A stretch of DNA of 64,000 nucleotides, taken from Paramoeba atlantica (taxonomy: Eukaryota; Protista; Discosea). This document shows positions 1-18,049 of this stretch, in pieces. Position 1 is the stretch's first letter, and every line of letters starts with the position of its first letter. The stretch lies in the NCBI GenBank assembly GCA_977017575.1, contig CDRNVI010000002.1, positions 682,001 through 746,000 of the forward strand, in the 5' to 3' direction. The notes beneath the pieces were generated by a model. It saw only the letters and a program-made list of their open reading frames with translations. It made no database searches and was not told the origin of the DNA. The translations under genes and the position numbers were made by a program.

Positions 1-1
1 T

Positions 2-400
2 CCGCATCCTGACGTTGTCCCGCATAAACACCGACTGTACACGGATGCGTCAGCTAAAGGATGGGGCGCGGTTCTTTACCGGGACGACGGACAAGTGATT
101 ATTGTTGGCGATAAATGGCAACCTGAGTTCAAATACGAAGTGAATCACGCTGAGGCGATGGCCGTTCGACTTGCGTTTGAAAAACTGACACACCACTTTC
201 AAAAAGGAACCTGTGTTGATTTGTTTATTGACAACACCTCTTGCCAAACAGCATTCAACCGCAAGATCGCGAAATCCGACAGTATTGCCGGAGAGCTCAA
301 GCGTGTGTTGAAGACAAATCAGAACTTTGGCGTATGTATCATGGCACGTTATGTGAGATCTGCCGAAAACCCAGCGGACCCTATCAGCCGCACCGGATAA
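2..400 (+). mobile_element. 3' end of a DIRS-like (tyrosine-recombinase retroelement, VIPER/TATE-type) RT-RNase H ORF, truncated by the window start
   Basis: Frame from base 2 reads ...LYTDASAKGWGAVLY...NHAEAMAV...LFIDN...YVRSAENPADPISR, the D-E-D-D RNase H pattern of DIRS-class elements. Stop at 398-400. Confidence 0.65.
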
Positions 401-825
401 GCATGTATACATACATGTATAGAAACTGGCATAGGTATGAATGTACCATTAATTAGTAAAACTCATTATATAGAATCAAAAAAAAAATTAGCTATATAGA
501 AAATATATACTATTCAATTTCATTACGCGGTAGGAATTCTTGAGAAACGTTTCGAGTTTTTAGTAATTGGCCGCCACCATTTGCTACAAACACGTGCGCG
601 CGGGAGTTTGGATTACGGGCGAACGGGTTGGTTCGCGGAGTTGGTGGACGGGATGCCCGTTCGTAAGTTTGAGGAGTTGTTGACTGGGTTTCTGTGATTG
701 TTTTTATTATATTGGCCAGGTACCTTGAATTCGTCAGATAGATATAGTTTATTGGAAACTAAAAATAGTCGGGATGATTGGACTGAAACTTTCATTGAAG
801 CGATATATTACTAGGAAAATTGGTT

Positions 826-1061
826 TTAACATGGTTTACTTTCATTATGATGCAGGGGAGAGAAGACGTTGATTTCATTTAATTTATGAACCACCCTCTC
901 GCATCCCCCCTTCGAAAGTACCCCCTGTTGTATCGGCGTGAACAAAGGACGTAATGTCGTCTCAAAGCGCTGGATTAAAACTAGCCCTGCAAGTTTCATC
1001 CAGACCTCGCCGATTGCAACTGGACGGACACCACCGTTTGGTTTCGGTATAGCGATAATAC
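826..1061 (-). pseudogene. Distal fragment of a CRE/SLACS-like RT ORF, continuing the ORF broken at 8710
   Basis: Reads IIAIPKPNGGVRPVAIGEVWMKLAG...IQQGV...GGCERVVH (CRE-type RT motifs). It resumes exactly where the 8652-9221 ORF breaks (RARIIA). Confidence 0.75.
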
Positions 1062-1076
1062 TTCTGTACCTTGTTG
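1062..1076 (+). other. Spliced-leader-like relic TTCTGTACCTTGTTG
   Basis: Resembles the 3' end of kinetoplastid SLs (TTCTGTACTATATTG / TTCTGTACTTTATTG). It sits immediately inside the TSD and is not followed by GT. Confidence 0.65.
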
Positions 1077-1745
1077 AATTTCCCCCATGCACCCCCATCA
1101 ATTTCCCCCATGCACCCCTTCACCCCTGGGGAAATTAAGCCCCCGTTCCGCCGCCCACTTCACCCCCTAGCGCCGCCCCCTTCGCCGTCCCCTCCACCCT
1201 GCTGCGTCGCCCTTCCGGCAACCTGTTTCGCCCCCCCTCTTGGGGAGGGAGCTTGAGCTACCCCATGCGCCGCCGCCGCCGCGCTCCCCGCCGCGCTCCC
1301 ACCGCGCCACCCGCCGCGCTCCCGCCGCGCTCCCGCCGCGCCCCCGCCGCGCCAACCGCCGCGCTCCCGCCGCGCCAACCGCCAAGCTCTCACCACGCCA
1401 CCCGCCCCGCCTCTCGCCCCGCCTCCCCTTCCGCCGCTCCCTTTGCCGCCACAATTTCCGCCCCGTTTTCGCCGCCTTCTTTCGTCCCCGCTTCGCCGGC
1501 CCTTTCTCCGTCCCCCCAGTCGCCGTTCCCCTCCCCGGCCCCTTGTGTGGAGCTACCCGGTGTCAGCAAAACAAGACGCCAAGAAACTAGGGTAGTCTCC
1601 ATATGCAAAAATTTAAATTGTGAAGGGCACTGGTCGAGCTCCATTGTGAGCCCCGCTGGTGAGAGAGCCTCGCAAGCTCCACACACCCTAGCGTGAGTCA
1701 TCCCTGGTGGTGGAACAGAATATAACGACTGTTCCACTACTTCTT

Positions 1746-2183
1746 CAGCTCCGTTTGGAATTCGACCAGTTTTCGTATGACGTTTTGAAAGCGAGCGAAT
1801 TGCGACACGCGAAACAGTCCTGCGGTCACCTGAAGGCGGTTGCATTGGATAGCGAAACAGGTGGCAGTGCGGAGGGCGTTGGCAGGATCAGACAACGCTT
1901 CGAAACGCGCACGAAACGCTGGTGCGTTTATCATTCGTCGAGCGCCGAAACTCCTTTTCAGCTCCGTTTGGAATTCGACCAGTTTTCGTATGACGCTTTG
2001 AAAGCGAGCGAATTGCGACACGCGAAACAGTCCTGCGGTCACCTGAAGGCGGTTGCATTGGATAGCGAAGCAGGTAGCAGTGCGGAGGGCGTTGGCAGGA
2101 TCAGACAACGCTTCGAAACGTGCACGAAACGCTGGTGTGTTTATCATTCGTCGAGCGCCGAAACTCCTTTTCAGCTCCGTTTG
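1746..2183 (+). repeat. 213-bp tandem duplication within unit 1 of the retro-insert
   Basis: CAGCTCCGTTTGGAA recurs at 1746, 1959 and 2172. The whole block is absent from unit 2, with an ACTTCTT microhomology at the junctions. Confidence 0.85.
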
Positions 2184-2589
2184 GAAAAAGAAGGAGAAGA
2201 AGAAGAAGAATTGGAAATGGCTTGCAGACAGCGCGAGCAAGTAACTTCTTTGCCCCAGGATGCGAATCCATCGGGCATTGAAGTCACGGATGACAAGTCA
2301 GACCACGCAACCTGACAGGTATTGCTTGTCTATCTGCGAGTGCGGCATCCCACTTGATTGATGATGATTTTTAGGCAATATATCTCCGAGGAGATGTTAC
2401 CTCCCTAGGACAAGCCCCCCCTTATCGCTTGCTAGGAGCCGTGCCACGCAGCACGCAAGTCAACACCTCTTCGCATTAGCCCTCATGCCGAGACTAGGGA
2501 TCACACATCCAGATCTTCCTTCTCAACTGTTTTGCCCAGGATGTAACATTCTTTTGAAAGACGAATCAATATTGCCACACATAATGGGA

Positions 2590-2602
2590 CTGTACCTTGT
2601 TG
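2590..2602 (+). other. Spliced-leader-like relic CTGTACCTTGTTG preceding unit 2
   Basis: Exact 13-mer shared with 1064-1076, 16 bp upstream of the second GC-rich unit. Confidence 0.6.
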
Positions 2603-3383
2603 ACCGATAATCAAATCAATCAATTTCCCCCATGCACCCCTTCACCCCTGGGGAAATTAAGCCCCCGTTCCGCCGCCCACTTCACCCCCTAGTGCCGCCC
2701 CCTTCGCCGTCCCCTCCACCCTGCTGCGTCGCCCTTCCGGCGACCTGTTTCGCCCCCCCTCTTGGGGAGGGAGCTTGAGCTACCCCATGCGCCGCCGCCG
2801 CCGCGCTCCCCGCCGCGCTCCCACCGCGCTCCCGCCGCGCCACCCGCCGCGCTCCCGCCGCGCCCCCGCCGCGCCAACCGCCGCGCTCCCGCCGCGCCAA
2901 CCGCCAAGCTCTCACCACGCCACCCGCCCCGCCTCTCGCCCCGCCTCCCCTTCCGCCGCTCCCTTTGCCGCCACAATTTCCGCCCCGTTTTCGCCGCCTT
3001 CTTTCGTCCCCGCTTCGCCGGCCCTTTCTCCGTCCCCCCAGTCGCCGTTCCCCTCCCCGGCCCCTTGTGTGGAGCTACCCGGTGTCAGCAAAACAAGACG
3101 CTAAGAAACTAGGGTAGTCTCTATATGCAAAAATTTAAATTGTGAAGGGCACTGGTCGAGCTTTTATTTTTTCATACTTTCCAGTAGAGTAAGTCGGGGG
3201 TATGACCCGCATTCAACGGGATTGCCCCCTTTTTAGAAGACAATGTCAATACGTTTCCTCCTCCGACCATGTCGCCTCATTTCGGCGAGCCCAGAGTATG
3301 TAACTCCCCCTGAGGGCCATCTGTGTCATGCTTTCTCGACACTTTGTGGCCAAAATATGGTCGCCGTTAAAGATGGCATTAAT

Positions 3384-6300
3384 TTATTTGCATGACCCAT
3401 TGGGGAATCCCCGGGCACCTATTTCAAAGGCTATTATGTAGGTGTCCGGGTTTTCCTGTCGCCGTGTATGTAAAAGGATGTTGTACTTCTCGGATTTTCT
3501 CCGATGAGCGTTCTCCGCATTCTCCTCCCATGGGACTGTGAGTTCGATGAGGAACTCTGTCCCATTGTGAAGTTTAATGTAACCGTCGGGACGGAGCAGT
3601 GTATCGTGTTCCCTCAGCCAAGCTGGTGGGTTACGCTCTCCTGGTAGGTCGAAATATGAAAACTCAGTTCCCTGTGCTTCCCTAATATGTTTCGCAAATT
3701 CGGCAAGGACAAGGTTATGACGGAAAGTATATCGTCCTTGCTGAAGTGAAGTGGTGCAGGCGGAAAGGGTGTGTCTGACGGTTTGCACTCGGTCGTTGCA
3801 AATAGGGCATTTCATGTTACTGTAGGTGCTGCGGCCCCATTGAACAAGCGCTGCTCGGGAAGGGAGCGGTGTAAGAGTCATGACGGATGCTACAAAGCGG
3901 GAGATCTTCGCATTCCGGATCCCATTTATGGCAGAAGCGAATTCTTGGGCCATTTCTGGATCCGTAGGAAACTGCCACCATAGGGCTGCGATGGGCGCGC
4001 GTTGCTGCAAGCGCGTGATCATTTCCTCCTCATGTGCTTCACGAAGCCGTTGACGAGTCATTCGGGGATCATCCAGATGTTCTGTAATTAAAGTAGCGGG
4101 TCGTATTTGACCTCTTTGACGTTTGTGTTGCTCTTCCTGTATGCGTATGCGAAGTGTATGTAGGACATTTGGATCTTTGGATTTGTTCATTTGCGTCATA
4201 GATTCTCCCGTGCATTCGTACCAAAGTTTTGACAGGCTCGTAAGGTTCCAGCCTCGGCAAGAGTACAGGACTTCAGAGCTTCCGGCACGCGCCATGTTTA
4301 TCCATTTCCGTATGTGAGACGTGGCTCGCTTCTGAAGGCGTAGCACGGATCCGAACGATAGACAGGGGTGAATAACGAACTGAAAACGGAGACGTGAGAG
4401 AACGGCATTTTTGTACATCCAAAGCTTAGCGGGAAGGCTGTGGGCACTTTGTGTGATGTTCTCCATCCACTGTTTTAGTTTTGAGTCGAGTTTACGAAAC
4501 AGCTCTTTCAGTTGTTGGGACCCCGGTGCCAAGGTCATCCCGAGGAAGGTGCTACCGACATCACATATGTGTGGTATGGTCTCTCCGTAGACTTTTATTT
4601 CCGGACGTCTTGTCATATAGCCTGGATGTTCCTCGCCTTTACGGGTGCTCATGCACTGTATTCGACTCTTGTTCACGTTAATCTTAAGGCCTAGCTCGCC
4701 CAGCACTTTGGTAACTGCATTAAGTGCGTGTTGCATGTCTCCGTCGCTTTCAGTAAGAATAGTTAAGTCATCAGCAAAAGCCTTAAGGAAGTTGTTCAGA
4801 CCGTTTGGGAGTTTCATACCGAAGTGCGGGCAGGAGAATCGGACATATCGCAAAACAATTTCCATCACTATCAGGAAGACAATAGGAGAGAGGGTATCCC
4901 CTTGGAGGACACCTTTTCGTATAGAGATAGGTTGCGTAAGACCTTCGTAGCACTTAATGCGCATGTGCGCATCCGTTAGGGTATTTTTGATGTAGTGGAT
5001 GACCTCCGGCTGTACTTGGGCCCATTTCAGAGCGGCATGTATGATATGATGTGGGACAGACCCGAAGGCATTGCTCAGGTCGAGTTGTGCGAGGCAATAT
5101 TGAGTTTTGTGTTTCTGGTAATGTCGCAGGAGTGAGCAAAGAGTTTGTGTGTGTTCCAGTGTACCGATAATGGAAGGGAGAAAGCCTTTTTGTATTTGAG
5201 GGTCAATGACATGGTGTTCAGTCAGGTGTTGAGTCAGTCGATGTGCGATGATCGTGTGAAAGGTTTTACCTAGAGCACTAGTAAGGGAGATCAGGCGCCA
5301 GTTTTTCGGATTTTCTTTGCTACCTGCTTTATATATCAGCCTGGTTACTGCGGTTTTCCATGATAGCGGGCACACAGAGAAAGTCATTAGATCGTTGAAC
5401 ACAGATGCAAAGTATTCGTGTGTCGATGGGCAGTTTTTGAGTATTTTGTTAGTTATCGTGTCGGTTCCTGGAGAACTGGCGTTGCGCTTCATTGTGACAG
5501 CTGCAGTGACATCCTCACGGGAGATCGGGTTCCATTGCATTGGCTGGCTAGCTGTCGGACCTAGTAGATCTGAAGGAGGGAGACGCGAGGATTGCTCATT
5601 AGGGTTAAAACTTTCTTGAAAGTATGATTCAATGCTAGATCTGTCACAGGTGGGAAATGCGGTGTTTTCTACCTCTCTTCCGTTAGGTTTATCAATCGTT
5701 TCGGATGCCGCGGTCCACGAGTTTCTAGAGAATCTCTGTGCGGCCCATCTTTCATCTAGATCTCTGCGTTGCATTGTAGCTTCCTCCTCCCTCAGCTTGA
5801 TCGCTTTGCGACATTCCTTAATTTGTGCCCGCGTTCTCTCGCGTTCCGCCCGGTTCCTCGTGTAACGTAGCGATCGTTTCATCGTTTCTAAATGGTGTTT
5901 GAGATCGGTTACGGTTCTTTCCGCCGCGAGTGGTCGGTATCTACGTCGTGCATGTCCGGTACTGGTCCTTATCAGGAAACCTTTCGTCGGATTTGCTTCT
6001 ATGGCGACTTCATGTGCTGAGACTGCTAATGCGGCACTGAGTAATTCCGCGTTTCGTACAGCTGCCTCTTTATCCGGTGTAGGGGTAAGTAGTTGAATGC
6101 ATCTCTCTTTCGCTCTCGATTCGACAATCCGCCACTGTACCTCATTTAGTCGTATCGTAACCTTACCTCCGCTTATGGCTTCGTGCTTCTGGAGAAGTTG
6201 CGTTTGCAATCTGGTTCGAGAGTAGGCTTCTTGCTCGGGGGAGGAAGGGTACTCTGCAGCCGGAGGAGGGCTGTTCGGGTGCTGGATGGCTGCTGCATCG

Positions 6301-8228
6301 GTCTCTGAGTCTTCGGTGTCTCTTTGCGTAGTGTTCCTCCGGGCATACACTGGTCCGTATACTTTGCAGCACTTGTGGGCACATTCCACTTTGTTTCGAC
6401 ATGTGTGCTGACACGGGTGCAAACTAAGCTTCGTAGGTGCCCTACTGATAGTTTGGATGCGGTGAGGGGATGCTTCTCGGCGCGGGTTCTTTTCATAGTG
6501 TACGTCTGAGGGATCTTCCTCCCGCTTATGTAGTGTAATATGCAGATGTTGAAGGAGGGGCACATCCCGTCCGGCAAGAACCTTGAGGATTGCGCGGCCG
6601 AGTGCTCCCGCGGAGCTGTATGACTCACCAAGTTTGAAGGTATCATCTTTGTAGAGGGAAGTCCAGCTGGCGTGCCGTCGGTGTTCTTGCGCGTGCGCTT
6701 GTTTTACAACCCTTATGTAGTCACATCCCTGGTGATCCATGAGTTCGTCCAGTGAGGCTGGCTGAACAATTAGGTCGTGGGAGCTTCCGTTCCCCGAAAG
6801 CATTTTACTGAGTGCCGCTTGCGCTGCTTGATGAGAAGCAATTCTGGCCTTGACTAGAGGGGATTCGCTGGCGGCCCGGACGTCTGGAAAATACCGCCAG
6901 GTGAGATCTGTGAGTGTTCTTATTTTTAAGGGGCGCGCCCGGCTTTGGACAAAATGAAGATTTTGTTTGTGTTGAAGCGATGCACTCAGTCCAGTAGGTG
7001 TTGTGGCAGCGTCATCTAGGTTTCCCGAGTGTTGGTTGTTGAACACCCAGGTGGGAACTTCGTCCGTGCTTTCTTCCAGTAGGATGTGATGGTCTACGGA
7101 GACGCTAGGTACCGGTAGTGGGGAAGGGAGGCGAGCGAGCACCTCGGGATACAGAGATTCTGTATTTTGGTTTTCGTATCCAGGGATCTCGTCGTTTTTA
7201 GTGGCACTGCATGAGGTAGCTATCGCGGCGTCGTTTTTGCTGTCGCAGTTTGGTTGCTCGGGAGCGCGATTTTCAAGGTGCAATAGTGGATTCGTACAAT
7301 TGGGTTCATCATTCTCTGCTTGTACATTATGCGCGCTTGGAGCTTTGGGGGTAAGGAAGTCTATGTACCAGAGAAAGATGCGTAGTGGTAATTTTACAAG
7401 TTCCAAAATGATGGTCGATGTTGATGTCTTCTTGGTCTTCCCAAGTAGCAACCAAAGTTCATCGTATTTCCGTGAGACAGGCGTTTTGAAGTTGGAGGGG
7501 GTTAGATAGATCTGGTTGATTGCCACTGGAACTAGAGGTATGCTGCTTCGCAAAAGACTGAGCGCATACCATGTGAGTGCGAATATTAAGTGGACAAGTG
7601 TGCAGAATAGTTCCATGAGGTACTTCACGTTATGAAATAGTATTGCAACCTTGAGGGTCTGCTCCGTGTAGGGGTTGCTCGTTTGATCTGGAGTAGTGTG
7701 TACTAAGTGGCGTTTGCAGCAGGCATGCTTGCATGTGTTTTTGTTTAGACATTTATGTTTACATGGCTTCGTTTGAGGTGGTTCTGTAGAGTTTCGGCAA
7801 TATGCAGGTTGGGTTACGAAGTAGGGTATTTTCATGAATATTGTCGCCAGTAATGCTTCGATGATGCAATATACTCTCCCGAAGAATCTCGGTGGGGTGC
7901 TTATATTCGTCAAGTTCGGTGCTGTAGGAATATCGATTTTGTTTATGCGAGGCTGTTGCCTCTTACAACACGGGTGAAGACATGTTCGTTTGTTGAGGCA
8001 CCTGTGTTTACATGGTGTTCCGTGGGTCATGGGGGTTTGCGGTACCATATTTGCAGTCACTAGTTCGGTTGGCGTGACGCATGATGGTCGTTCGGAGGGG
8101 GCTCCATTCTCGTCGACGGGACGTCCATGGTCTAAGAGATCAACGGTTGACATATCAACGCCGCGTGGTCCTCCTGTAAGGTCCTGCGGCGCATCAGCAT
8201 GAGTGCAATGTGAAGGGGGTCGCGTCAT
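3384..8228 (-). CDS. 1614-aa RT plus restriction-like endonuclease polyprotein, HERO-like
   Basis: RT motifs NWRLISLTS, QKGF, LDLSNAFGSVPH, GVLQGDTLSP, AFADDL. Zinc knuckle CPIC...HTLSAC..SLQQGRYTFRHNLVL and RLE LRPDG...IELTVPWE...RKSEKY. Clade assignment is by motif resemblance only. Confidence 0.9.
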   Translation of the reverse strand: MTRPPSHCTHADAPQDLTGGPRGVDMSTVDLLDHGRPVDENGAPSERPSCVTPTELVTANMVPQTPMTHGTPCKHRCLNKRTCLHPCCKRQQPRINKIDIPTAPNLTNISTPPRFFGRVYCIIEALLATIFMKIPYFVTQPAYCRNSTEPPQTKPCKHKCLNKNTCKHACCKRHLVHTTPDQTSNPYTEQTLKVAILFHNVKYLMELFCTLVHLIFALTWYALSLLRSSIPLVPVAINQIYLTPSNFKTPVSRKYDELWLLLGKTKKTSTSTIILELVKLPLRIFLWYIDFLTPKAPSAHNVQAENDEPNCTNPLLHLENRAPEQPNCDSKNDAAIATSCSATKNDEIPGYENQNTESLYPEVLARLPSPLPVPSVSVDHHILLEESTDEVPTWVFNNQHSGNLDDAATTPTGLSASLQHKQNLHFVQSRARPLKIRTLTDLTWRYFPDVRAASESPLVKARIASHQAAQAALSKMLSGNGSSHDLIVQPASLDELMDHQGCDYIRVVKQAHAQEHRRHASWTSLYKDDTFKLGESYSSAGALGRAILKVLAGRDVPLLQHLHITLHKREEDPSDVHYEKNPRREASPHRIQTISRAPTKLSLHPCQHTCRNKVECAHKCCKVYGPVYARRNTTQRDTEDSETDAAAIQHPNSPPPAAEYPSSPEQEAYSRTRLQTQLLQKHEAISGGKVTIRLNEVQWRIVESRAKERCIQLLTPTPDKEAAVRNAELLSAALAVSAHEVAIEANPTKGFLIRTSTGHARRRYRPLAAERTVTDLKHHLETMKRSLRYTRNRAERERTRAQIKECRKAIKLREEEATMQRRDLDERWAAQRFSRNSWTAASETIDKPNGREVENTAFPTCDRSSIESYFQESFNPNEQSSRLPPSDLLGPTASQPMQWNPISREDVTAAVTMKRNASSPGTDTITNKILKNCPSTHEYFASVFNDLMTFSVCPLSWKTAVTRLIYKAGSKENPKNWRLISLTSALGKTFHTIIAHRLTQHLTEHHVIDPQIQKGFLPSIIGTLEHTQTLCSLLRHYQKHKTQYCLAQLDLSNAFGSVPHHIIHAALKWAQVQPEVIHYIKNTLTDAHMRIKCYEGLTQPISIRKGVLQGDTLSPIVFLIVMEIVLRYVRFSCPHFGMKLPNGLNNFLKAFADDLTILTESDGDMQHALNAVTKVLGELGLKINVNKSRIQCMSTRKGEEHPGYMTRRPEIKVYGETIPHICDVGSTFLGMTLAPGSQQLKELFRKLDSKLKQWMENITQSAHSLPAKLWMYKNAVLSRLRFQFVIHPCLSFGSVLRLQKRATSHIRKWINMARAGSSEVLYSCRGWNLTSLSKLWYECTGESMTQMNKSKDPNVLHTLRIRIQEEQHKRQRGQIRPATLITEHLDDPRMTRQRLREAHEEEMITRLQQRAPIAALWWQFPTDPEMAQEFASAINGIRNAKISRFVASVMTLTPLPSRAALVQWGRSTYSNMKCPICNDRVQTVRHTLSACTTSLQQGRYTFRHNLVLAEFAKHIREAQGTEFSYFDLPGERNPPAWLREHDTLLRPDGYIKLHNGTEFLIELTVPWEENAENAHRRKSEKYNILLHTRRQENPDTYIIAFEIGARGFPNGSCK

Positions 8229-8256
8229 GGTAACGATAAAGATAAGAGAAAAAAAA

Positions 8257-8284
8257 CAACAAGGTACAACAAGGTACAGAAACT
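8257..8284 (-). other. Longest SL-like relic AGTTTCTGTACCTTGTTG plus a second TACCTTGTTG
   Basis: The minus strand reads AGTTTCTGTACCTTGTTG-TACCTTGTTG, then a 28-nt pyrimidine-rich leader, then the ATG of the retroelement ORF. Confidence 0.7.
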
Positions 8285-8710
8285 TTTGTGAGCCCCGCTG
8301 GTGCTTATTGTAGAGCTAGTTGAAGGAGCTAGTTGGAGCTTTGTGGAGCTTATTGTGAGCCCCGCTGGTGAGAGAGCCTCGCAAGCTCCACACACCCTAG
8401 CGTGAGTCATCCTGGTGGTGGAACAGAATATAACGACTGTTCCACTACTTCTTTGCCCCAGGATACGAATCCATCGGGCATTGAAGTCACGGATGACAAG
8501 TCAGACCACGCAACCTGACAGGTATTGCTTGTCTATCTGCGAGTGCGGCATCCCACTGGGAAAGTCTGCGCGCGACTGACAGCGTACCACCCACGGAGTA
8601 CGGTAATACCCGGTGCCGTTTCACACGAGCACTAAATAACTAGGGTGTACTCTAAACCCATAGCCAGTCATGGCCAAACGGGTTAAACAACAACAACAAC
8701 AACAACAACA

Positions 8711-10031
8711 TAGCGATAATACGTGCCCGCTTCAACCGTCGCATTATCTCATCGGGGAGAAATCCGTTGATAAGGTCCGTGAACATATGGCATAGTTGCA
8801 AGCTGCAGACTGGGTCGTCGATTAGTATGCGGATTAGAGAGTCCGTAGTGCCCGTTGGACCTGGACTAGCTCCTTTGACTAGCCTGTGCCCTGCCGCCTT
8901 GAGCTCCATCGGTTCTAACCCAACAAGGACCGGCGCATCGCTGGGAAGAGTGAATTCGTACTTGTTTTGTGGATGCAAATCCTCCAGTTTCGAGAGCGTC
9001 TCCTCTTCTGAGAGCTGATACGGCGTAAATGCTTGGTCCATAACTTGAGCTGCTTTCCTGGTATTACCTTCCAAGACCAATTTTGTGGCTCTCTTGATTG
9101 CCCTTTTGTCTGTTACTTGACGACCCTTGGAAACCTCGGCTTGTGTAGTCTTATCTTCGTTCCCTTCTGGGAAAGGACGACGACGCCTCTTCCGTTTCGA
9201 ACTTTCTATAAAAGATGCCAAGGAACACTACATGGCTGACAATACGCTGTGCCAGATCTCATGTCGCTGTGAATATGAACTATGTGCATATTCGCTCATG
9301 AGTTCGCGATAGGTCGCTACTACTCCGGGTATCATTTCTGGACTGATTATGCGAGAAGTGGGAATGGGAGAGTGGTCCAGATCATCTGGGGCCCAGTTCT
9401 CGACGGTAGAGGCTGCTGGAAGGATACGCTTCGTCTGTTCCGTCCTTTCGATTCGCTCTTCTGTTACCGTTGTGTCGGGAAGATGCCATACAATTTTATA
9501 GATGCTAACCGTTTCGACTGGTGGAAGTGTGCCGAAGAAGTCTTCTTCTGGCTTATGGCCGACGATGCCTGTGTATTGGATGTTCAATCTGCCATTCCCT
9601 CGCCTCTTGTAAACCCCGGTTACTTTTCCTAGAGATACATTGATTTTATTGTTATCAAAAGCCCAGGCAACCGTGCAGACAGATCCTTTCTTTATGTGTT
9701 TGGATTTATTCCACAGTTCGCAAGCCGGAATCGGATGCTGATTCTGAGGCAGGATGTTCCCAAGCATCTGTTCGCACATCTCATGGGGATCTGCGAGTGC
9801 ACCATAAGAAATATCCCATTTGTTTGTTTCGGTGCTTGAAGACGTCTGTGTGTTATCGATACATTGGATTACTGGCGTATCGTCCTTAGTTTGCAGGTGA
9901 TCTGGGGCTGATGGAGGTTCGCGGTCGTCCGAATCACCTTCTTTAGAGAAAGCATTGGGGTCTTCGGGGGTTATACTTGTTATAAAAAGGGGTCGGCATC
10001 TACGCTGTAAATAATTACAGTTTCGACACAC
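8711..10031 (-). pseudogene. Proximal part of CRE/SLACS-like RT ORF (N-terminal region through RT domain 0/1)
   Basis: ORFs 9228-10031 and 8652-9221 are in one frame, separated by a single TAG at 9228-9230. Contains RATKLVLEGNTRKAAQV, LEDLHPQ and GASPGPTG. Confidence 0.75.
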
Positions 10032-10300
10032 GTGTCGCTAAACGATATCCCCTCGAGGGAGAAAGCCCTCGTCAACCTCCCGTGAGCTCATTAAAATAAT
10101 GAGCTAGAAAGTCAGTTGTTTGACTTTCCACCAGGGGAGGTAACTCGCTAGGGTACGCGGAGCTTGCGAAGCTCGCTCACCAGCGGCCTTCAAAGAAGAC
10201 AACCAATGCCCTTCACGCCCTTTGTGAGAAGGGAGTTTTTGCCCGACGACGACCAAAATTGGCATCATGGCAGACGGCAAAAACTTGTCACTTTCCATCC

Positions 10301-10610
10301 TCTTGTCCTAGTTATTTAGTACATCGTTTACGTGTACCAGACAAGACTCAGGTCATTCCCCAAGGGGCAGGGGCTTCCTTTCGATAGAGAGGAAGGATCT
10401 TTATGTCAATAGCGCGAATGACTCCTGCCCTAGTTTTGTAGTACCTTGTTATATTCGGTACCGGGCGGTGTCATTCTCATTCTGCATTGTCAGAGTGACA
10501 GTTCCCCTAGTTATTTGGTGCCTCGTTATGTTGGCACCGGGTATTGTCACCCACAGGATCATGCTCACCCTAGTTTTTTAGCGTCTTGTTGTACTGACGC
10601 CGGGTGAGTT
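10301..10610. repeat. Array of four covarying two-stem hairpin motifs
   Basis: Copies at 10307-10340, 10428-10465, 10505-10541 and 10568-10604. Inner stems differ in sequence but all pair: gtaca/tgtac, gtacc/ggtac, gtgcc/ggcac, gcgtc/gacgc. Confidence 0.8.
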
Positions 10611-10670
10611 AGCTCGGGAAGCTGGGATCGCTAAGTCCCATCATCCGGCCTGAGCCGAATGCCCTGACTA

Positions 10671-11951
10671 CTACTCTTCGGGGGTTGGTTCTTTGATTTC
10701 CGATATCTCCACATCGGTTTTGTGAATTGATGGAGATCCCGGAGAGAGAAGCTGATCACGGCTATGGTTTTGCTTCCCGTCAATGGGAGAGAAAAACTCA
10801 AGCGTTGGTGGGGAGAAAGAGATTTCTTTTGCATCATAAACCGGTGTTTCAGGCGTAGCAAACCCGTCGGGCGTTGATAGGGATAAGATGTCTGACGTGT
10901 TGGGAGTTGAGTCTTCTATCTCGGGCGTGTCGGAAAAAGGATCGAAACTGTGGACATCATGAACGTATCCGTTGCCCACCCATCTGTACCCTTTAAATCT
11001 GGGGTCCTTTGGGTCAGGACGATCGGGCTCTTGAACTCCAGGACTTGAGAATTCAGGAAGTGCAGTCTCATGACGAGATTCAGTGGGAGGCAGGTTGCGT
11101 TCCATTATCGTTGTCTGTTTGCTTTCGGAAGTTTTATCTCTGATGGGGGTTTTATTGTCGTCCGACTTGCCAACCGATAGAGCTTCCGTTATGTTATGCT
11201 CCGCGTCTAGTTTTGGCTTTGGCTCTTCCGGGATTGGTTCTACGCTTGTTATTCCACTTGGCACTCCGTGGTGTCAGAAGGCCCTTCCAAACTGTTTTTC
11301 CAACTGCTCCTGCAACCTTTCCAAGTGTCGACAGCCGGGAAGTGTAATTGAGTTCGCTGTCCTTTCCCTGAATGCCGTTTCCCATCATTAAGGCCGTGGT
11401 GTGTTTTTCTCTGGCACCTTCGTCATCTCCTCGTCGTGTTCGGGACTGATTCTCCTCTCTGATATTTAGGATACTTTTCTTGAAGGAAATATTTTCAGAT
11501 GTTCGAATCACATCTCCCTGTGTGGGAGTTTTTTCTAGTGTAGACGTTTTCGCTTTGCGGAGGATTATCTTTAAATTGGAGCGTTGCGGCGTGCTGGCTT
11601 CAGCCGCCTTTCTATCCGATTCTTTCCGTTCCGCTTCTTTTCTTTCCGCTTCTTCCTGTTCAGCTTTTTTTCGGTCAGCTTCTTCTTGTTCCATTTGTTT
11701 CTTAAACTCGTAAAAAGAGATTCGTCGATATGAGCGTTTTTGTTCTTTTCGTCCTGATCCTGATAGTTTCTTATCCGTTTCTTTTGAAGGAAGATTTGCT
11801 GGGCTGGAGATTTGCCGGAATGGAGGAACTGAGGTTGGCGAAAGAGAAAACACATTGGTTGGCGAAAGAGAAAGCACATTGGTTGGCGAAAGAGGAGGCG
11901 GCGAAAGAGGAGGCGGCAGGTCCGAAGGTCGAACAGTCTTTTTTTAACCAC
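10671..11951 (-). pseudogene. Low-complexity, frameshifted ORF1-like region upstream of the CRE-like RT
   Basis: Overlapping minus-strand ORFs (11571-11951, 11194-11877, 10671-11264) are charged and Pro-rich, with 30-bp repeats at about 11830-11920. They lie between an SL-like relic and the RT ORF. Confidence 0.4.
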
Positions 11952-12045
11952 TCCGATGAATTACTTTCGTAAACTTTCACGCCTCTCGCCAACGATATCC
12001 GCAGTCCGAGCGGACTATTTTGAAAAATTATACAACTCGGATAGA

Positions 12046-12058
12046 CAACAAGGTACAG
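12046..12058 (-). other. Spliced-leader-like relic CTGTACCTTGTTG at the presumed 5' end of the CRE-like element
   Basis: The plus strand has CAACAAGGTACAG. It is oriented like the downstream minus-strand ORFs and is not followed by GT. Confidence 0.55.
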
Positions 12059-12334
12059 GAGACGTGGGGCTTCGGGAGACGTGGGGCATTCGGAATGAAT
12101 CAGGGCTAACACCCAGTTCGCCGAATAGCGAGGGCTTAGCTCTCCACGTGCCCGGGGAAGGAAGTCCTAGGATCTGCGGAGGCAGCAAATCGCTCACCGA
12201 TTTGCATACCCTATTCGAAACTCGCAAGAGTTTCGATGATCCAGCGACCAGGCTCCTTCCCCCAAGTTCCCCTGCTTTCTCAGGGGAGGCGACATCCTTG
12301 TACTAGGGTAACCGCCTGTAATCACTATCACTAT

Positions 12335-12530
12335 CACCCGCCGCGACACCAGCCGCGCTCCCCGCCTGCGCTCGCCGCCTGCGCACCCCGCCACGCTCCC
12401 CGCCGCGCTCCCCGCCACGCTCCCCGCCTGCTCTCCCCGCCTGCACTCCCCGCCTGCGCTCCCCGCCACGCTCTCCGCCGCGTCACCCGCCGCGACACCG
12501 GCCGCACTCCCCGCCACGCTCCCCGCCGTC
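12335..12530 (+). repeat. GC-rich degenerate minisatellite (CGCTCCCCGCC-like)
   Basis: Same motif class as 1270-1400 and 2790-2900. Confidence 0.65.
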
Positions 12531-12960
12531 ACTAAGGGTGTGATGCCGCAATCTAATAACTTGCTAAACTTGGACATTGTGGGAGGGAAAAGGTCGTACA
12601 ATATAAAGCTTGCAAGAATGTTGTTAATTATTCGCCGTTTACTTACATCGTTGCTTCCGTACTAACTTGGACACTTCGGGAGGGAAAAGGTCGTACAATA
12701 TATTTATAGTTTACGAAAAGAATTGTTTAAAGAGGATTTGCAGGTTTTCTATATTATAGAGGGTATGTGTGGCCCTACGGGGCACATAATAATATTTTAT
12801 TATGATCTATTAATATGTGATTAATATGTGTTAATATATTATATTAATATGTGTAATATAAAAATTACAATAGGATCCTTCGTACACTTATTTCGCCACA
12901 CCTCTCTTTACACGTGCTTTTCCGACTTTTTCTCACACATCTCTTTGTATAGCTAGTATA

Positions 12961-13562
12961 TTAAATATCAATAATTTCACAGAAATACCGAAGATTTTTC
13001 AGCATACGAAGTAAAACGTCGTTACCATTTATCTTCAACTTTCCATTGCTTTTCTCATCTAAAGCTCTTACTCGACTGCCGGGCTTTTCATCCCACCGAC
13101 CGAGTATACCCCCTTCACGCTTGAACGTCTTCTTCACAAGTGAATTAGCCGACTCAACTCTGTTTGTGTGAACACCTTCTTGTGGTACCCACTCGCTTTG
13201 GACCAATTGGATGCACGAATTGGACCAATTGGTGCACCACCTTTTCCCACTTGTATCTACCTTGCAGTTGTAGATTATGACGGGCGGAATCAGTCCGGAT
13301 CCTAGTCATACACCCCTTTGCATTTTTTGGTACACCGCCACTTCTCGTCGCTCAATCGCATTTCCAATGGAGAGGAGTGACTTCGCTTGTTGCATATCAC
13401 TTTCCTTGCAACAACATCATGGCATTTTAACCAGTGTCGACATTGAGCCTCTGAAGCTACCTTAAAATAGTTAGCTTCCGACGGCCCGTGAATCCACGAC
13501 ACCCCTCGCACACTATGTAAGGAATTCAAAAAAATGTAAAATATTTTTTCTAAAAAGTACAT
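12961..13562 (-). pseudogene. Internally deleted Merlin/IS1595 (ISXO2-like) transposase remnant
   Basis: C-terminal VHTNRVESANSLVKK motif (12961-13206) and an N-terminal Cys-rich segment L..KVICNKRSH...MRLSDEKWRCTKKC (13302-13562). The central DDE region is missing. Confidence 0.6.
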
Positions 13563-14237
13563 GGGTAATTTACCCCGCTTTTCTCAATATTTATCACCAA
13601 ATTTTTGAAAAGCGAATTCTCGTTCAATTTCCCCCGCAATACAAACATGCTTTCTGACTCAATGGAGTGAAGGGTTTTTTTTGATCACATGTCCCACAGT
13701 AACGTAGTGGAAATCTATCCCTTCCAACCTGAACGTACTCCTCCGACATGATCAAGGAAATGTTTTGTTCTTGTAAACGAAAAGAATCTAGTAGAAATAT
13801 TTATTTTTCAAATAAAAGTACGACCAAAAATTTCATTAGTAGTATATGTAGTATATGTCTTTTTTTTCAAAATTGTGTCATACGCTGCCACATGCTGCCG
13901 TGCACTGTCAAACGCTGCCAGCCACTGCGAGCCAAAACTGCATGGGTTCCATTGAGAAAAATTAAAAGAGGAAAAATATAAAAAAATCACCCCTTAACTC
14001 CGTCGCACCCGGACGCACCCTCCTGTTTCAACCCTCTTATTACTGTATTCCTTTATCTTATTACTGTGTTCCTCTTTATACACTGTATTTTCGCTGTTTT
14101 TATTCACTTTTTTTCAATAATTCTACGCTGTAGGTCAATCTTGAAATACTTAAGAACATTGTGAATATTCTCCTCACCACATGCACGCGTCCAAAACGTT
14201 TACTCCAATAATCTGAAGCAGAATCTGAGAAAAGGGG

Positions 14238-16406
14238 ATGCGAGTATCTAGAATATTGCTACAAAGTCAAGGCGTAATGGGTGGTTCTAGACAATTCGTA
14301 GAAGGTAGGCTCAATGCGCGATATGCGGCTAAATCCGGGTTTCATTGTCTTAATATGGGAAAGTTAACGTCCCAGTTGAAGGCCACAATTCAGCAAGATA
14401 GACGCGAGAATGGATTGTCACAAATTGTCGATTGGGGCGAGTTTTGTGAAGAAGCAACCTCAATTCCTACACGCAGGGGACCCATGTGGCTCGGAAAAGA
14501 TGATCCTCGCGTTGTACGCTATATGCGGCGACTAGAAAAAATGAAAGAAAATGTTATGCATATTGCGAGACCCAGAATTAGTGAAGACCCTGTGGAAAAG
14601 CTAGAATCACACGAGCATCGCGTCTATTTTACTACGGCGACGAATCTTCGCGATCCACTTTCTGTTGCTGAGGGGCTTTACAGATTAGGAAGGATCAAGC
14701 GTCAAGACGTAAAGTATACTGCTACTAAGATAAGCTACATCCCGCGTTGTCCAATTGTTTCTATTATGGGTCATGTGGATCATGGCAAGACCACTCTTTT
14801 AGATACGCTTCGGAAGACTAATGTGGCGGGCCAAGAAGTCGGAGGCATCACACAAAGTATTGGTGCCTTCCAAGTGAAGCTTGGAGTCAACGAAGGGGTA
14901 GGGTCTATCACCTTTATTGATACACCGGGCCATGCAGCATTTGAATCTATGCGGAAATCTGGAGCATCCGCAACTGACATAATCGTTCTAGTTATCAGCG
15001 CCACTGACGGAGTGCAGCCTCAAACCTTAGAAGTCATAGATATAGCGAAAGCCAATGCAGTCCCAATTATAGTTGCCATAAACAAGATTGATAAGGGGGG
15101 AAATGCAGAAACAATTCTCAACGTTCTATCTGGAAAAGGAATTAACCTTGAACCAAGGGGCGGCGATACCTTGGTCACCAAAGTAAGCGCAAAATATGGT
15201 ACAAATATTGAAGAGCTTTTGGAATACATACAATTACAAGCCGTGATGTGTGAGTTATATTCACCCACACCTTCGCGTGCGGAGATCACAGTCCTCGAGT
15301 CGCGAGAGAATCAGGTAACGGGGGTAGTTCGATGCGGCATCCTTCGCCCCGGTTCCTGGTTAGTATGCGGTATCAGTCTTGCTTGTGTAACGCGCCTTCG
15401 AGACGAATCGGGGAAAGAGATCAACCAAGCCCTACCGGCACAGCCTGTACTTATTGAAGGATTTCGCGTCCTTCCGAAGCCCGGCAACACGATTATGGAA
15501 GTTGCAAACAAGACATACGCCCATCGATTCGTGAATCTTATGCGCGACGTTTACACAGTGGAGGGTGGACAGGAAAAGTACATGCAGATACTTGCAGCAG
15601 AGTCATCAGGACAAATATTCGAAAGAAAACCGAATAACAAATTGCGAGCATACGATCGTAAACTGTTTAGCCTAGTAATCAAGGCCGGTACTTTTGGGCA
15701 ACTCCAGGCTCTTTTGCGACTTATATATGAGCTTCCGGAAATACCGGGAACAGAGCTATCAATCATAATTGCCGAAGTCGGCTCGCTGGATGATAACGAT
15801 GTGCTACACCTAAATGCGAAACAGCAAGCCGGGGGGGCTCTTTTGTTTGGGGATGCGAAGGATGGGTCCCGTATGGCGATTCCGAATTACGTAGAAGTCG
15901 CACAATTTGATGTGGTGTTTCATGCTATAGATTGGCTAAAAGCTAAAATCGTTGAGCAGTTACCAAGAAAAAGAGTCGACACTGTTCTCTCGCGAGCGAT
16001 ATGTCGCAATACTTTTCGCGCTTCGCAATCAAAAGGTGGGAATGCAGCTGGATGCTACGTAGAGAAAGGTAAACTACACGTTGCAGCCGACAATCTCCGG
16101 GTAGTGCGACGAGGAGAAGTCATCGGTGAGGGGAAAGTCAGCTTTTTAAGACGCTTCAAAGAAAATGTATCCTTTGTTGAGGAAGGGCTTGAGTGTGGGG
16201 TAGTTCTAGACATTGATTTTGAATTTGAAGCAGGGGATATCCTAGAAGAGTATACAATTGAATGGAAAGAGAATGACGTAGATAGTGAGTACGAAAAAGC
16301 CGTGGCAATCGAAACCGAAAAAAGGCAAGCGGAAGAAAGGAAAAAGGAGACTGAAGGGGACGTTCAACGTGAATTTCCTGAATTTGATTTCTCTGCCGAC
16401 GCGTGA
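14238..16406 (+). CDS. IF2: Mitochondrial translation initiation factor IF2
   Basis: 722 aa with [14 protein letters not shown] and NKID GTPase motifs and the C-terminal GxECG domain. Intronless, with an upstream polypyrimidine tract at about 14030-14120. Confidence 0.92.
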
Positions 16407-16567
16407 CTAACCTTTTTGAAATGAAATTTAGCAATAAATTAACAATAAAGCGTTATTGCGCTAAAGCCTCATAAAAAACCAGATAACTAAATGAGAAATT
16501 TTTAAAGGAAAAGAAAGGTCGAAATTCTGCAAAAAAAACGAAATATTACGAAAATTTATACTATATA

Positions 16568-16915
16568 CCGTGAAAGTACTTATTAACAGAATAAAAATCA
16601 TTGGAATAAAAATTAGCGAAATAATAATTAACGGAATAATTTTTTTTTAAGATTTTCACCAAAATTTTCCCAAACATTTTAGTCAGTGGGCGGTCTGTTC
16701 ATCAACAAAATTCGAAGTATTTCTGTCGTGAAGAAAAAAAGCGACGTTACCGCGAAAAGATGAATCGATTAAGACGTATCAGCAGAACGTTTCTCTTGAC
16801 GCTTAAAGTTTTGTAGAAATTTAGTAAAAATCATTGGAATAATAACTAACGGAATAATTTCTGCCCAAAAAAACATTCCGTTAATTATTATTATTGTTAA
16901 TAAGTACTTTGACGG
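16568..16915. mobile_element. TA-flanked MITE (Tc1/mariner type)
   Basis: TIR CCGT(G/C)AAAGTACTTATTAACA at both ends. TA at 16566-16567 and 16916-16917. Confidence 0.8.
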
Positions 16916-17163
16916 TAATTGTTGATACAAAAAGAGATTCAATATACAAGTCTTGCAAACTATTTATTCATCCCAAAATCCCTTCGCCGACAGAGGCGCA
17001 CACTTTCTACTCGGCACACTTCGTACCTGAAACGCATTACATGCGTACCGTTATAAAAACAGATATAAAATGAAAAAATGAAGGGGGGAAATACGGCGCC
17101 GCTTCTTGTTGATGCCGAAAATACAAAAGACGTCGGTGGAATCTCCCTTTAAAAGGGACACCA

Positions 17164-17463
17164 GTGTTTGGAATTACTGCCGAGGTTTGGTCTGATTATT
17201 CGTCCGGCAAAGGTTTTGACCGCGATCCAGCCAAGCATAAGACGGCCTGGAGTTGGTGGCAGTCAAGAGGGCGGGAATTGTTTCCCACTATTTATGAAGC
17301 TGCTCGTCACTACCTCTTTGTTGTCCCTGTTGTCACCGAGTGCGACTCTCTGCTTTCCATCATGGGATGGAAGTATGATGCACGGCAGGCTTCTCTAGAA
17401 TCTGACGTTATTGCGACACAGATGTTCCTCCGCGGTAATTTGGAGAATATTGGATTTTCGTGA
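17164..17463 (+). pseudogene. hAT transposase C-terminal dimerisation domain remnant
   Basis: WSWWQSRGRELFPTIYEAARHYL...R.ASL...MFLRGN follows the hAT-C pattern WW..FP.L...A...L...R..L...FL..N. Confidence 0.6.
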
Positions 17464-18049
17464 AGTTGGTTTGACAAGAAAATGACGTTTATAGACATTT
17501 GCTATACCTGTAGTACATTTTTTTAAGTTTACTTAGGGCTTTTTTCCGTGAGTTCTTAATGATGGTCTTGTTTTTCCCTTTGTAAACATACAAGTTTGAA
17601 GTTTCATCCGTTCTATATTCTATAATATTTATATTCGTTCATGGAAATTTTTTATAACTGTTGTTTGAATAGTACTATTTCGTGTGATGTCATGAAAGAA
17701 GATAAAGCATTTTTGGTCCAATTTTTAATGTTAAGATATACATCTCAAATGGGGGGTTTAAATGAGGTGTATCATTCAATCGAAATGCAACGTAATAACT
17801 CCATACAAAAGACAGTTGTAGACAATGTAGAGTTGCAATCTATTTGCTTCATACATAGTGATAATCATAATAACGTCCTCTGGTGTGGTAATCATACATA
17901 CATGTATCTTTAGAAGATTTTTGCAAAATCTCAACAACCTACATAGTTTATGACACCGGTTGCGAGGAGTGCCTTTATGTCGCATCGGTCCTTCTTTTGT
18001 CTGCCTCAATCATGTCCGAAACTGCTGCTCCACACTCTCAAAAGGCGCA

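What the first reader, a model, noticed from the sequence alone, without database searches (positions are those of the whole stretch)
1062..12058. Spliced-leader relics cap the 5' ends of several different retroelements: retrotransposition through trans-spliced RNA
Seen: CTGTACCTTGTTG occurs at four insert 5' boundaries, always in the element's sense (1062-1076 +, 2590-2602 +, 8267-8284 -, 12046-12058 -). The longest is AGTTTCTGTACCTTGTTG. None is followed by a GT donor, so none is an SL RNA gene. Known: the T. brucei and Leishmania SLs end AGTTTCTGTAC-TATATTG and AGTTTCTGTAC-TTTATTG, giving the same 11-nt core and same 7-nt distance to a terminal TTG. Relic SLs from mRNA recycling are known in dinoflagellates, and SLACS/CZAR/CRE insert into SL genes. 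Inference: a HERO-like element, a CRE-like element and a non-autonomous element all let host trans-splicing define their 5' ends, in place of a promoter or 5' ribozyme, and reverse-transcribe into the SL. This predicts the host SL sequence.
Basis: partly seen in the sequence, partly recalled or inferred. Interest (0 to 1): 0.9.

Follow-up and report, generated by a model that had tools for sequence, protein, structure and literature searches.

The report
Retrotransposons headed by host spliced leader
Several jumping genes in this kinetoplastid genome begin with a DNA copy of the short leader that the cell splices onto all its messenger RNAs, so they were copied back from ordinary processed RNA; the same habit appears in a second species, and I found no report of it for mobile elements.

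Summary
The 13-mer lies at 1064, 2590, 8267 and 12046, each in the sense of the sequence it heads and none followed by GT.

It is the 3' end of the host's spliced leader (SL). Real SL RNA genes (38-nt exon, then GTATGAGAAGC) sit in arrays with 5S rRNA. An RNA-like contig joins the leader to a host gene at a canonical AG (window 14153-14154).

The genome holds 1104 copies of the 13-mer and only 40 are SL-gene junctions. The rest head at least 40 different repeat families. Relic lengths vary (13-38 nt) among near-identical copies with unrelated flanks.

In the window, a 13-bp target-site duplication encloses an insertion that starts with the relic, so the leader belongs to the insert and not to the target. 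Fourteen stacked relics are cut at the leader's internal AG, which indicates re-splicing.

Position 2 reads T in 62% of near-full relics and in none of the SL genes. This suggests copying from mature, modified RNA.

A second kinetoplastid, seen in metagenomes, has RT elements headed by its own, different leader.

How the leader is renewed each round remains open. This scan had already reported the phenomenon on other DNA of this genome.

The parts
1..1048 (-). Continuation of old RT element E. RT motifs 1-2 read IPKPNGGVRPVAIGE on the minus strand. The RT core lies left of the window.
1049..1061 (.). Target-site duplication, copy 1 (ATAGCGATAATAC).
   Evidence: the same 13 bp recur at 8710-8722, and both copies encode the same residues of E's RT frame
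1062..1076 (+). 15-nt spliced-leader relic, the first bases of the inserted DNA.
1062..2589 (+). Non-autonomous element A-var. It has C-rich repeats, a 2 x 213-bp tandem repeat at 1744-2169 and its own 3' region at 2355-2589.
2590..2602 (+). 13-nt spliced-leader relic heading element A2, directly after the 3' end of A-var (head-to-tail pair).
2590..3162 (+). Non-autonomous element A2, 5' part (98.5% identical to 1097-1640).
3163..8284 (-). Intact R2-superfamily (HERO-like) retrotransposon R. The ORF spans 3384-8228 (1614 aa) with RVT_1 at residues 971-1207, followed by a C-terminal CCHC and a PD..E..K endonuclease motif. The 5' UTR is 28 nt.
8257..8266 (-). 10-nt stutter (TACCTTGTTG) between the relic and the body of R. 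It is absent from the 99% identical copies elsewhere.
8267..8284 (-). 18-nt spliced-leader relic heading R.
8285..8342 (.). Untidy 5' junction of the R insertion, with short duplications of target sequence.
8343..8709 (+). Element A2, 3' part, ending in a (CAA)n tail at 8688-8709.
8710..8722 (.). Target-site duplication, copy 2.
8723..12045 (-). Old, decayed RT element E, 5' part. Frames are broken; RT motif 0 lies near 8723-8900; a 260-bp repeat family is inserted at about 9969-10673.
12046..12058 (-). 13-nt spliced-leader relic at the probable 5' end of E. Another repeat family ends at 12070.
14153..14154 (+). AG trans-splice acceptor of the host gene (ORF 14238-16406). The leader is joined at 14155.

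Best explanation
The 13-mer is the 3' end of the host's spliced leader, whose exon in the SL RNA genes reads AACTTTAACGATAAAGATACAGTTTCTGTACCTTGTTG. Retroelement RNAs in this organism get their 5' end as host mRNAs do: the leader is trans-spliced a few tens of bases upstream of the first ORF. The element's reverse transcriptase then copies this mature RNA from its 3' end. It often runs into or through the leader, and the copy is inserted with a target-site duplication.

Incomplete copying leaves relics of 13 to 38 nt. Realignment of the growing cDNA on short repeats inside the leader (TG..TG, TTT..TTT) would make the stutters. Jumps from the 5' end of one RNA to the 3' end of another would make head-to-tail pairs, as at 1062-8709.

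Shown here: the identity of the leader, its presence on a host mRNA-like contig, relics inside the target-site duplication, variable truncation within families, stacked relics cut at the AG, and the same habit in a second species.

Inferred: that element RNAs themselves are trans-spliced, the stutter and jump mechanisms, and the absence of an own promoter or ribozyme.
For: - SL RNA genes: 40 exon-intron junctions, 32 of them with the near-complete exon (36 nt or more) intact, in arrays with 5S rRNA.
- A host mRNA-like contig of run X3 covers only 14154-16602. It begins with 23 nt of the leader, joined at an AG that follows a pyrimidine tract.
- 1104 genomic copies of the 13-mer, 341 of them 36 nt or longer.
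- In an unbiased sample of 87 distinct sites, one is an SL gene. The other 86 end exactly at the exon end and are followed by at least 40 different sequences, mostly a short T-rich UTR and then an ATG.
- Within families the upstream flanks are unrelated and relic lengths differ. The 99% identical copies of R carry 18, 24 and 32 nt.
- A 13-bp target-site duplication encloses an insertion that starts with the relic.
- 14 sites show a full leader followed by the 16 nt that remain after the leader's own AG.
- 7 of 14 RT hits in fully listed regions have a same-strand relic within 5.5 kb upstream, against 0.066 expected per hit.
- Position 2 is T in 192 of 309 non-gene copies and in 0 SL genes.
- A second species has RT elements headed by its own, different leader, also with AG-cut stacks.
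Against: - No reads were laid on the elements themselves, so trans-splicing of element RNA is not seen directly.
- The relic-body junction reads TTG, not AG, so a relic-bearing copy cannot be re-spliced at the same point.
- All copies of R found carry relics, and no relic-free source copy was found.
- The idea that a TTG-to-TAG change creates an acceptor is refuted: 0 such copies exist.
- Stacked AG-cut relics are rare (14 of about 1064), so re-splicing at the relic's AG is not the main route.
- The fourth window site heads mosaic sequence that has no other copy in the genome.
Confidence: 0.85

Rival explanations
1. The leader is picked up during reverse transcription, not by trans-splicing of the element RNA. 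On reaching the 5' end of an unspliced element RNA, the reverse transcriptase jumps to the 3' end of a free SL exon (the first-step splicing intermediate) and copies it.
For: Template jumping seems active here. Poly(A) runs abut full leaders in many loci, and head-to-tail pairs lie within one target-site duplication. Stacked partial relics are separated by 0-7 nt spacers.
Against: - The leader-body junction is fixed within a family and sits 3-60 nt before the ATG, as in host mRNAs.
- The 16-nt remnants begin exactly after the leader's AG, which is a splice-site signature.
- The free SL exon is a rare, spliceosome-bound species (own knowledge).
Confidence: 0.07
2. The leader-like head is an inherited part of each element, captured once from an SL gene and then copied along from an internal or upstream start.
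For: Some families share upstream flank as well as relic. One example is six sites with the same flank; these are duplicated units, not fresh insertions.
Against: - Near-identical copies carry relics of different length, some longer than others, and never anything upstream of leader position 1.
- At least 40 unrelated downstream families carry the relic.
- The second species carries its own leader on related elements.
- The A-to-T change at position 2 is absent from all SL genes.
Confidence: 0.05
3. The elements insert site-specifically into SL genes or SL sequences, as SLACS, CZAR and CRE do, so the leader is target DNA.
For: CRE-clade elements of trypanosomatids do this (PMC12278014). One metagenome contig shows a relic-headed element about 100 nt inside an SL gene intron.
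Against: - In the window the target-site duplication lies outside the relic and is part of another element's RT gene.
- Upstream flanks are unrelated to SL genes, relics are truncated from the 5' side at variable points, and no SL remainder or intron follows the elements.
Confidence: 0.02

Closest known systems
mRNA recycling with relic spliced leaders in dinoflagellates (Slamovits and Keeling 2008, as described in PMC3229502 and PMC6050394)
   Same: DNA copies of the host leader sit at the 5' end of retroposed units. Stacked relics are truncated at the leader's internal AG, which records repeated rounds of splicing and reverse transcription.
   Different: In dinoflagellates the tagged units are host genes (retrogenes). 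Here the tagged units are mainly autonomous RT elements and their non-coding riders, in a kinetoplastid. Variable 5' truncation, stutters and a position-2 change are seen here.
SLACS / CZAR / CRE1 / CRE2 of trypanosomatids (PMC12278014, PMC4728078)
   Same: Kinetoplastid LINEs with an RT and a restriction-like endonuclease, physically linked to spliced-leader sequence.
   Different: Those insert at one fixed point inside SL RNA genes, so the leader is target DNA on both sides. Here the leader is inside the insert, ends at the exon's last base, and the copies are dispersed.
L1Tc / ingi with the Pr77 internal promoter (PMC1874656, PMC8190864)
   Same: Kinetoplastid non-LTR elements that must make a defined 5' end in a genome with polycistronic transcription.
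   Different: Pr77 drives unspliced transcripts from inside the element. The elements here show a leader where Pr77 would be.
R2 elements: co-transcription with the host gene, a 5' HDV-like ribozyme and end-to-end template jumping of the RT (own knowledge)
   Same: R's protein aligns with solved R2 proteins over the RT and endonuclease. The head-to-tail junctions fit template jumping.
   Different: No ribozyme family matched in the window. The 5' end coincides with the leader junction, and insertion is not in rDNA.

Membership tests
Retroposed copies of trans-spliced RNA (relic spliced leader) | The relic is identical to the host SL exon. | tested here: met
   SL RNA genes carry the same exon followed by GTATGAGAAGC, in arrays with 5S rRNA.
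Retroposed copies of trans-spliced RNA (relic spliced leader) | Host mRNAs carry this leader. | tested here: met
   A contig of run X3 covers only 14154-16602 and starts with 23 nt of the leader, joined at an AG. The run's kind is not on record; its coverage pattern is RNA-like.
Retroposed copies of trans-spliced RNA (relic spliced leader) | The relic ends at the exon's last base and no intron follows. | tested here: met
   86 of 87 sampled sites. All four window sites.
Retroposed copies of trans-spliced RNA (relic spliced leader) | The relic lies inside the inserted unit, bounded by a target-site duplication. | tested here: met
   The 13-bp duplication at 1049-1061 and 8710-8722 encloses 1062-8709, which begins with the relic.
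Retroposed copies of trans-spliced RNA (relic spliced leader) | Stacked relics are cut at the leader's internal AG. | tested here: met
   14 sites in this genome and three contigs of the second species.
Retroposed copies of trans-spliced RNA (relic spliced leader) | Element transcripts themselves carry a freshly added leader. | not tested
Genomic relics would in any case confound short reads.
SLACS/CZAR/CRE site-specific elements | Insertion at a fixed position inside the SL RNA gene exon, with SL gene sequence on both sides. | tested here: not met
   Flanks are unrelated to SL genes, and the window's target is another element's RT gene.
R2-superfamily LINE (restriction-like endonuclease; HERO-like) | RT domain followed by a C-terminal CCHC and a PD-(D/E)xK endonuclease. 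| tested here: met
   RVT_1 at E = 2e-30. Alignment to R2 structures reaches residue 1607. CPICN..H..C and RPDG..E..K motifs are present. There is a weak zf-RVT match.
R2-superfamily LINE (restriction-like endonuclease; HERO-like) | Placement in the HERO clade by phylogeny. | not tested
   Evidence is only nearest-hit: fish, amphioxus and sea-urchin proteins at 24-28% identity, and no CRE or SLACS names among the 120 best hits.
R2-superfamily LINE (restriction-like endonuclease; HERO-like) | A 5' self-cleaving ribozyme, as in R2. | tested here: inconclusive
   No Rfam match at E <= 0.1 in 1-14500. Divergent ribozymes could be missed.

The most novel reading that the evidence does not exclude
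A whole community of LINE families in free-living kinetoplastids has given up promoters and ribozymes and relies on host trans-splicing to make its 5' end. Their reverse transcriptases read through the capped leader and leave a fixed A-to-T mark at position 2, which would be a DNA record of a cap-proximal RNA modification. The same enzymes would build tandem arrays by jumping between leader-headed, tailed RNAs. Because the habit is shared by at least two species with different leaders, it would be an old, lineage-wide strategy and not an accident of one genome.
Probability: 0.4. Interest if true: 0.85.

Novelty: new variant of a known kind. Interest (0 to 1): 0.8.

Why it matters
Non-LTR retrotransposons lose their promoter unless they carry it inside or borrow one. 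The known solutions are internal promoters, ribozymes that cut the element out of a host transcript, and insertion behind the SL gene promoter. Using the host's trans-splicing would be a fourth solution, and a natural one where genes are transcribed in long polycistrons.

The relics also give a built-in tag for counting and dating retroposition events. They record how far the reverse transcriptase reads into a heavily modified cap structure. They raise a concrete open question: how a copy that already carries a relic obtains a fresh leader at the same junction.

Relic leaders also mimic SL genes. About 149 copies are followed by GT, so they can mislead SL gene finders and splice-site annotation.

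Tried and rejected
- A TTG-to-TAG change at the relic end might create an acceptor in source copies. Rejected: 0 TAG variants genome-wide, and only 2 variants of any kind at that base.
- An SL gene variant with T at position 2 might explain the T in relics. Rejected: 0 of the SL genes have it.
- Known ribozyme or other RNA families at the element heads: none in 1-14500. A bacterial-type promoter scan at the head of R was uninformative.
- Element E as a multi-copy DNA family: only a 260-bp internal repeat and 36-39-nt pieces recur. Its ORFs had no Pfam hit apart from the RT core, and the RT had no PDB hit. A protein search did find distant relatives, one of them leader-headed.
- Naming the organism from exact protein look-up: no names were returned. 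The 13-mer occurs in no kinetoplastid paper of the library.
- Literature searches for leader-headed mobile elements in kinetoplastids found none. This covers open-access papers and preprints only.
- Other metagenome relatives of R (contigs L152-L154 and L156-L161) showed no leader core. Several of these contigs start inside the element.
Full report
**The observation.** The 13-mer CTGTACCTTGTTG occurs exactly at 1064-1076 (+), 2590-2602 (+), 8267-8279 (-) and 12046-12058 (-). A one-mismatch overlapping copy lies at 8257-8269 (-). About 0.06 matches are expected by chance. Read against the full leader, the relics are 15, 13, 18 and 13 nt long. None is followed by GT.

**What the motif is.** The genome (45.7 Mb, 248 contigs) has 1104 copies, against 0 for the reversed control. 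In the first 30 loci, most copies are preceded by the same 23-25 bases. This gives a leader of 38 nt.

A search for the motif followed by GT found 189 places. Most of these belong to a dispersed repeat that begins GTACATTTT. A minority have the exon followed by GTATGAGAAGC and stem-loops, in tandem units that also hold a 5S rRNA gene on the other strand. There are 40 such exon-intron junctions, 32 of them with the near-complete exon (36 nt or more) intact, mostly in arrays on C97, C107, C11 and C74. These are the SL RNA genes.

The core CAGTTTCTGTAC and the 39-nt format match published kinetoplastid leaders (tables in PMC6872171 and PMC3795323). The end CCTTGTTG appears in no paper of the library.

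**Host mRNAs carry it.** Contigs of four public runs were laid on 11900-17899. Run X3 covers only 14154-16602, as an mRNA would. Its 2472-nt contig begins with 23 loose bases, AGATACAGTTTCTGTACCTTGTT. The genome there reads a long pyrimidine tract followed by AG at 14153-14154, 84 nt before the ATG of ORF 14238-16406. The kind of run X3 is not on record, so calling it RNA is an inference from its coverage.

**Anatomy of 1-12058.** The oldest layer is a decayed RT element, E, on the minus strand.
- E's frame reads RT motif 0 and ends ...RRLKRARIIA at 8723 and above.
- The same frame resumes IIAIPKPNGGVRPVAIGE below 1061.
- E's RT core (RVT_1, E = 8e-18) lies about 4 kb left of the window.
- The 13 bp ATAGCGATAATAC occur on both sides, at 1049-1061 and 8710-8722. 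They form the target-site duplication of everything between.

That insert, 1062-8709, starts with the 15-nt relic and ends in (CAA)n. It is a head-to-tail pair of two non-coding elements of one family. A-var spans 1062-2589. A2 starts at 2590 with a 13-nt relic.

A2 is in turn split by an intact retrotransposon, R (3163-8284, minus strand). R's head is an 18-nt relic, then a 10-nt stutter, a 28-nt T-rich UTR and the ATG of a 1614-aa ORF.

Each flank was translated on its own.

**The elements.**
- R has RVT_1. It aligns with solved R2 proteins up to residue 1607. It carries a C-terminal CCHC followed by RPDG..E..K.
- Outside its own species, R's best relatives are metagenomic proteins, followed by fish, amphioxus and sea-urchin proteins at 24-33% identity. 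No CRE or SLACS names appear among the 120 best hits. 'HERO-like' is therefore reasonable but was not tested by a tree.
- E's RT is only 25% identical to R's. Its endonuclease was not found, so 'CRE-like' is open.
- Family A has no convincing ORF or domain.

**The relics were written in from RNA, event by event.** Copies of R that are 99% identical lie in unrelated flanks with relics of 18 (+10), 24 and 32 nt. More distant relatives have 17 to 32 nt, again directly before a short UTR and an ATG. Heads of family A in 14 loci are variable stacks of leader 3' pieces.

An unbiased sample of all 13-mer sites on contigs C1-C3 and part of C4 gave 87 distinct sites.
- One of the 87 is an SL gene.
- Relic lengths are bimodal: 34 sites have 13-19 nt and 33 sites have 35-38 nt.
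- Downstream sequences fall into 40 clusters, 19 of them with several members. Those members mostly have unrelated upstream flanks and different relic lengths.
- Most downstream sequences are a 25-50 nt T-rich UTR followed by a long ORF.

The genome has about 1850 RT-like segments, and all 150 that were scored pass Pfam's cut-off. Of the 14 scored RT hits that lie where every 13-mer site is listed, 7 have a same-strand relic within 5.5 kb upstream, against 0.066 expected per hit. By my own calculation this gives a binomial P of about 1e-5.

A distant relative of E with a 1623-aa open frame also has a 36-nt relic 27 nt before its ATG.

**Signs of repeated rounds and of the enzyme's behaviour.** Fourteen sites have a full leader followed by TTTCTGTACCTTGTTG, the 16 nt that remain if a new leader is spliced at the old relic's own AG. 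This is the signature described for dinoflagellate mRNA recycling (PMC3229502).

About 12 of the 87 sampled sites have shorter second pieces. The commonest is TACCTTGTTG. It differs between near-identical copies of R, so it arises at the event itself. Realignment of the cDNA on the TG..TG repeat in the leader would give exactly this product. A TTT..TTT realignment would explain heads such as the one in L126. Both mechanisms are inference.

Many full-length relics are directly preceded by poly(A). Together with the A-var/A2 pair inside one target-site duplication, this fits jumps of the enzyme from the 5' end of one RNA to the tail of another. That behaviour is known for R2 enzyme (own knowledge).

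**A mark near the cap.** There are 341 copies of 36 nt or more.
- The base before CTTT is T in 192.
- It is A in 105, which includes the 32 intact SL genes.
- It is C or G in 44.
- No SL gene has T at this position.

Relics from many unrelated families thus read A-T-C where the gene reads A-A-C. The simplest reading is misincorporation opposite a modified base of the mature leader. That would be further evidence that the template was processed RNA. The modification itself is unknown.

**A second species.** A metagenome contig (L155) encodes a relative of R (31% identity, 1523 aa). Its first ORF starts 31 nt after a 34-nt relic of a different leader...GATACAGTTTCTGTACTTTATTG, followed by AG and not GT.

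A scan of metagenome contigs for that leader's end followed by a non-G base found 23 contigs from lakes and groundwater.
- One contig holds the true SL gene of that species.
- Others show full or truncated relics after unrelated flanks, then short UTRs and long ORFs.
- Three contigs have AG-cut 16-nt stacks, one of them with three layers.
- Four of seven long ORFs have RVT_1. One of these also has zf-RVT and is 30% identical to R over 764 residues.
- Two ORFs are ordinary host-type genes (a P-type ATPase and a choline transporter) on contigs that start in the leader. These may be transcript-derived records or retrogenes, and I cannot tell which.

The habit is therefore not peculiar to one genome, and the relic follows the host's own leader.

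**What remains open.** The relic-body junction reads TTG, so a relic-bearing copy cannot be re-spliced at the same point. No relic-free copy of R exists in the assembly. The TAG-acceptor idea is refuted. AG-cut stacks are too rare to be the main route. How source copies regain a clean leader-body junction is unknown.

A rival explanation is that the leader is picked up by a template jump onto a free SL exon. It is not excluded, but it fits the fixed junctions and the AG-cut remnants poorly.

**Literature.** Relic leaders are well known for dinoflagellate retrogenes (PMC3229502, PMC5585692, PMC6050394). For kinetoplastids the library describes CRE/SLACS insertion into SL genes (PMC12278014, PMC4728078) and the Pr77 promoter of L1Tc/ingi (PMC1874656, PMC8190864). 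I found nothing on leader-headed mobile elements.

This scan had already reported the phenomenon on other windows of this genome. New here, as far as I can see, are the target-site duplication that places the relic inside the insert, the position-2 change, the rejection of the TAG idea, and the second species.

Noticed in passing
G000 genome-wide; examples L019, L022, L025, L092: In near-full-length leader relics, the base at leader position 2 is T in 192 of 309 non-gene copies. All SL RNA genes have A there. This may be a DNA record of a cap-proximal RNA modification.
   Followed up: partly
window 15657-15974: One contig of run X5 skips 316 nt with GT..AG ends inside host ORF 14238-16406. The skipped length is not a multiple of three. 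Kinetoplastids are said to have only three intron-containing genes (PMC11613528), so this may be an artefact, a deletion allele or a rare splice.
   Followed up: no
L001-L004 (G000:C1:9752-25042, 5093-bp tandem units): A 37-nt leader copy is flanked on both sides by the same 34-nt sequence (acttttcttatttg...aataaaagt) in every unit of a tandem array. The arrangement looks like a leader-only insertion or a jump product.
   Followed up: no
L005, L006, L018, L019, L022, L029 (first ORFs after the relic): Several poly(A)-flanked, leader-headed families share an N-terminal motif, GSWDQF..N..L...STY.E.LYTTP. It gives weak, sub-threshold matches to the LsmAD domain of ataxin-2-type proteins (E = 9e-5 to 3e-3).
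   Followed up: partly
L031-L035, L038-L042 and about 149 places genome-wide: A dispersed non-coding repeat begins GTACATTTT right after a truncated leader relic (14-31 nt), so it mimics an SL gene donor site. It carries a long hairpin (cccggaaacgggca...tgcccgtttccgg).
   Followed up: partly
window 11941-12015: The first ~120 nt after the fourth relic are a mosaic. A 36-nt piece recurs in 132-bp satellite arrays on C4, C9 and C41, and a 39-nt piece is found at about nine dispersed loci. This may be a chimeric head made by template switching.
   Followed up: partly
L024, L025, L086, L090, L146: Several leader-headed families, including a relative of element E, start their ORF with MG(V/M)(F/L)TR. 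This looks like an N-myristoylation-type start.
   Followed up: no
L007, L109, L123, L127: Poly(A) is followed by leader bases 2-12 and then by a complete leader. The extra piece ends near the position where CRE/SLACS elements cut SL genes in trypanosomatids.
   Followed up: no
L170 (metagenome contig Ga0194134_10100527): In the second species, a relic-headed element sits about 100 nt downstream of a true SL exon, inside the SL RNA gene's intron region.
   Followed up: no
G000 genome-wide: About 1850 RT-like segments lie in 45.7 Mb, many within open frames of more than 1000 aa. This is an unusually rich and young retroelement load for a kinetoplastid.
   Followed up: partly
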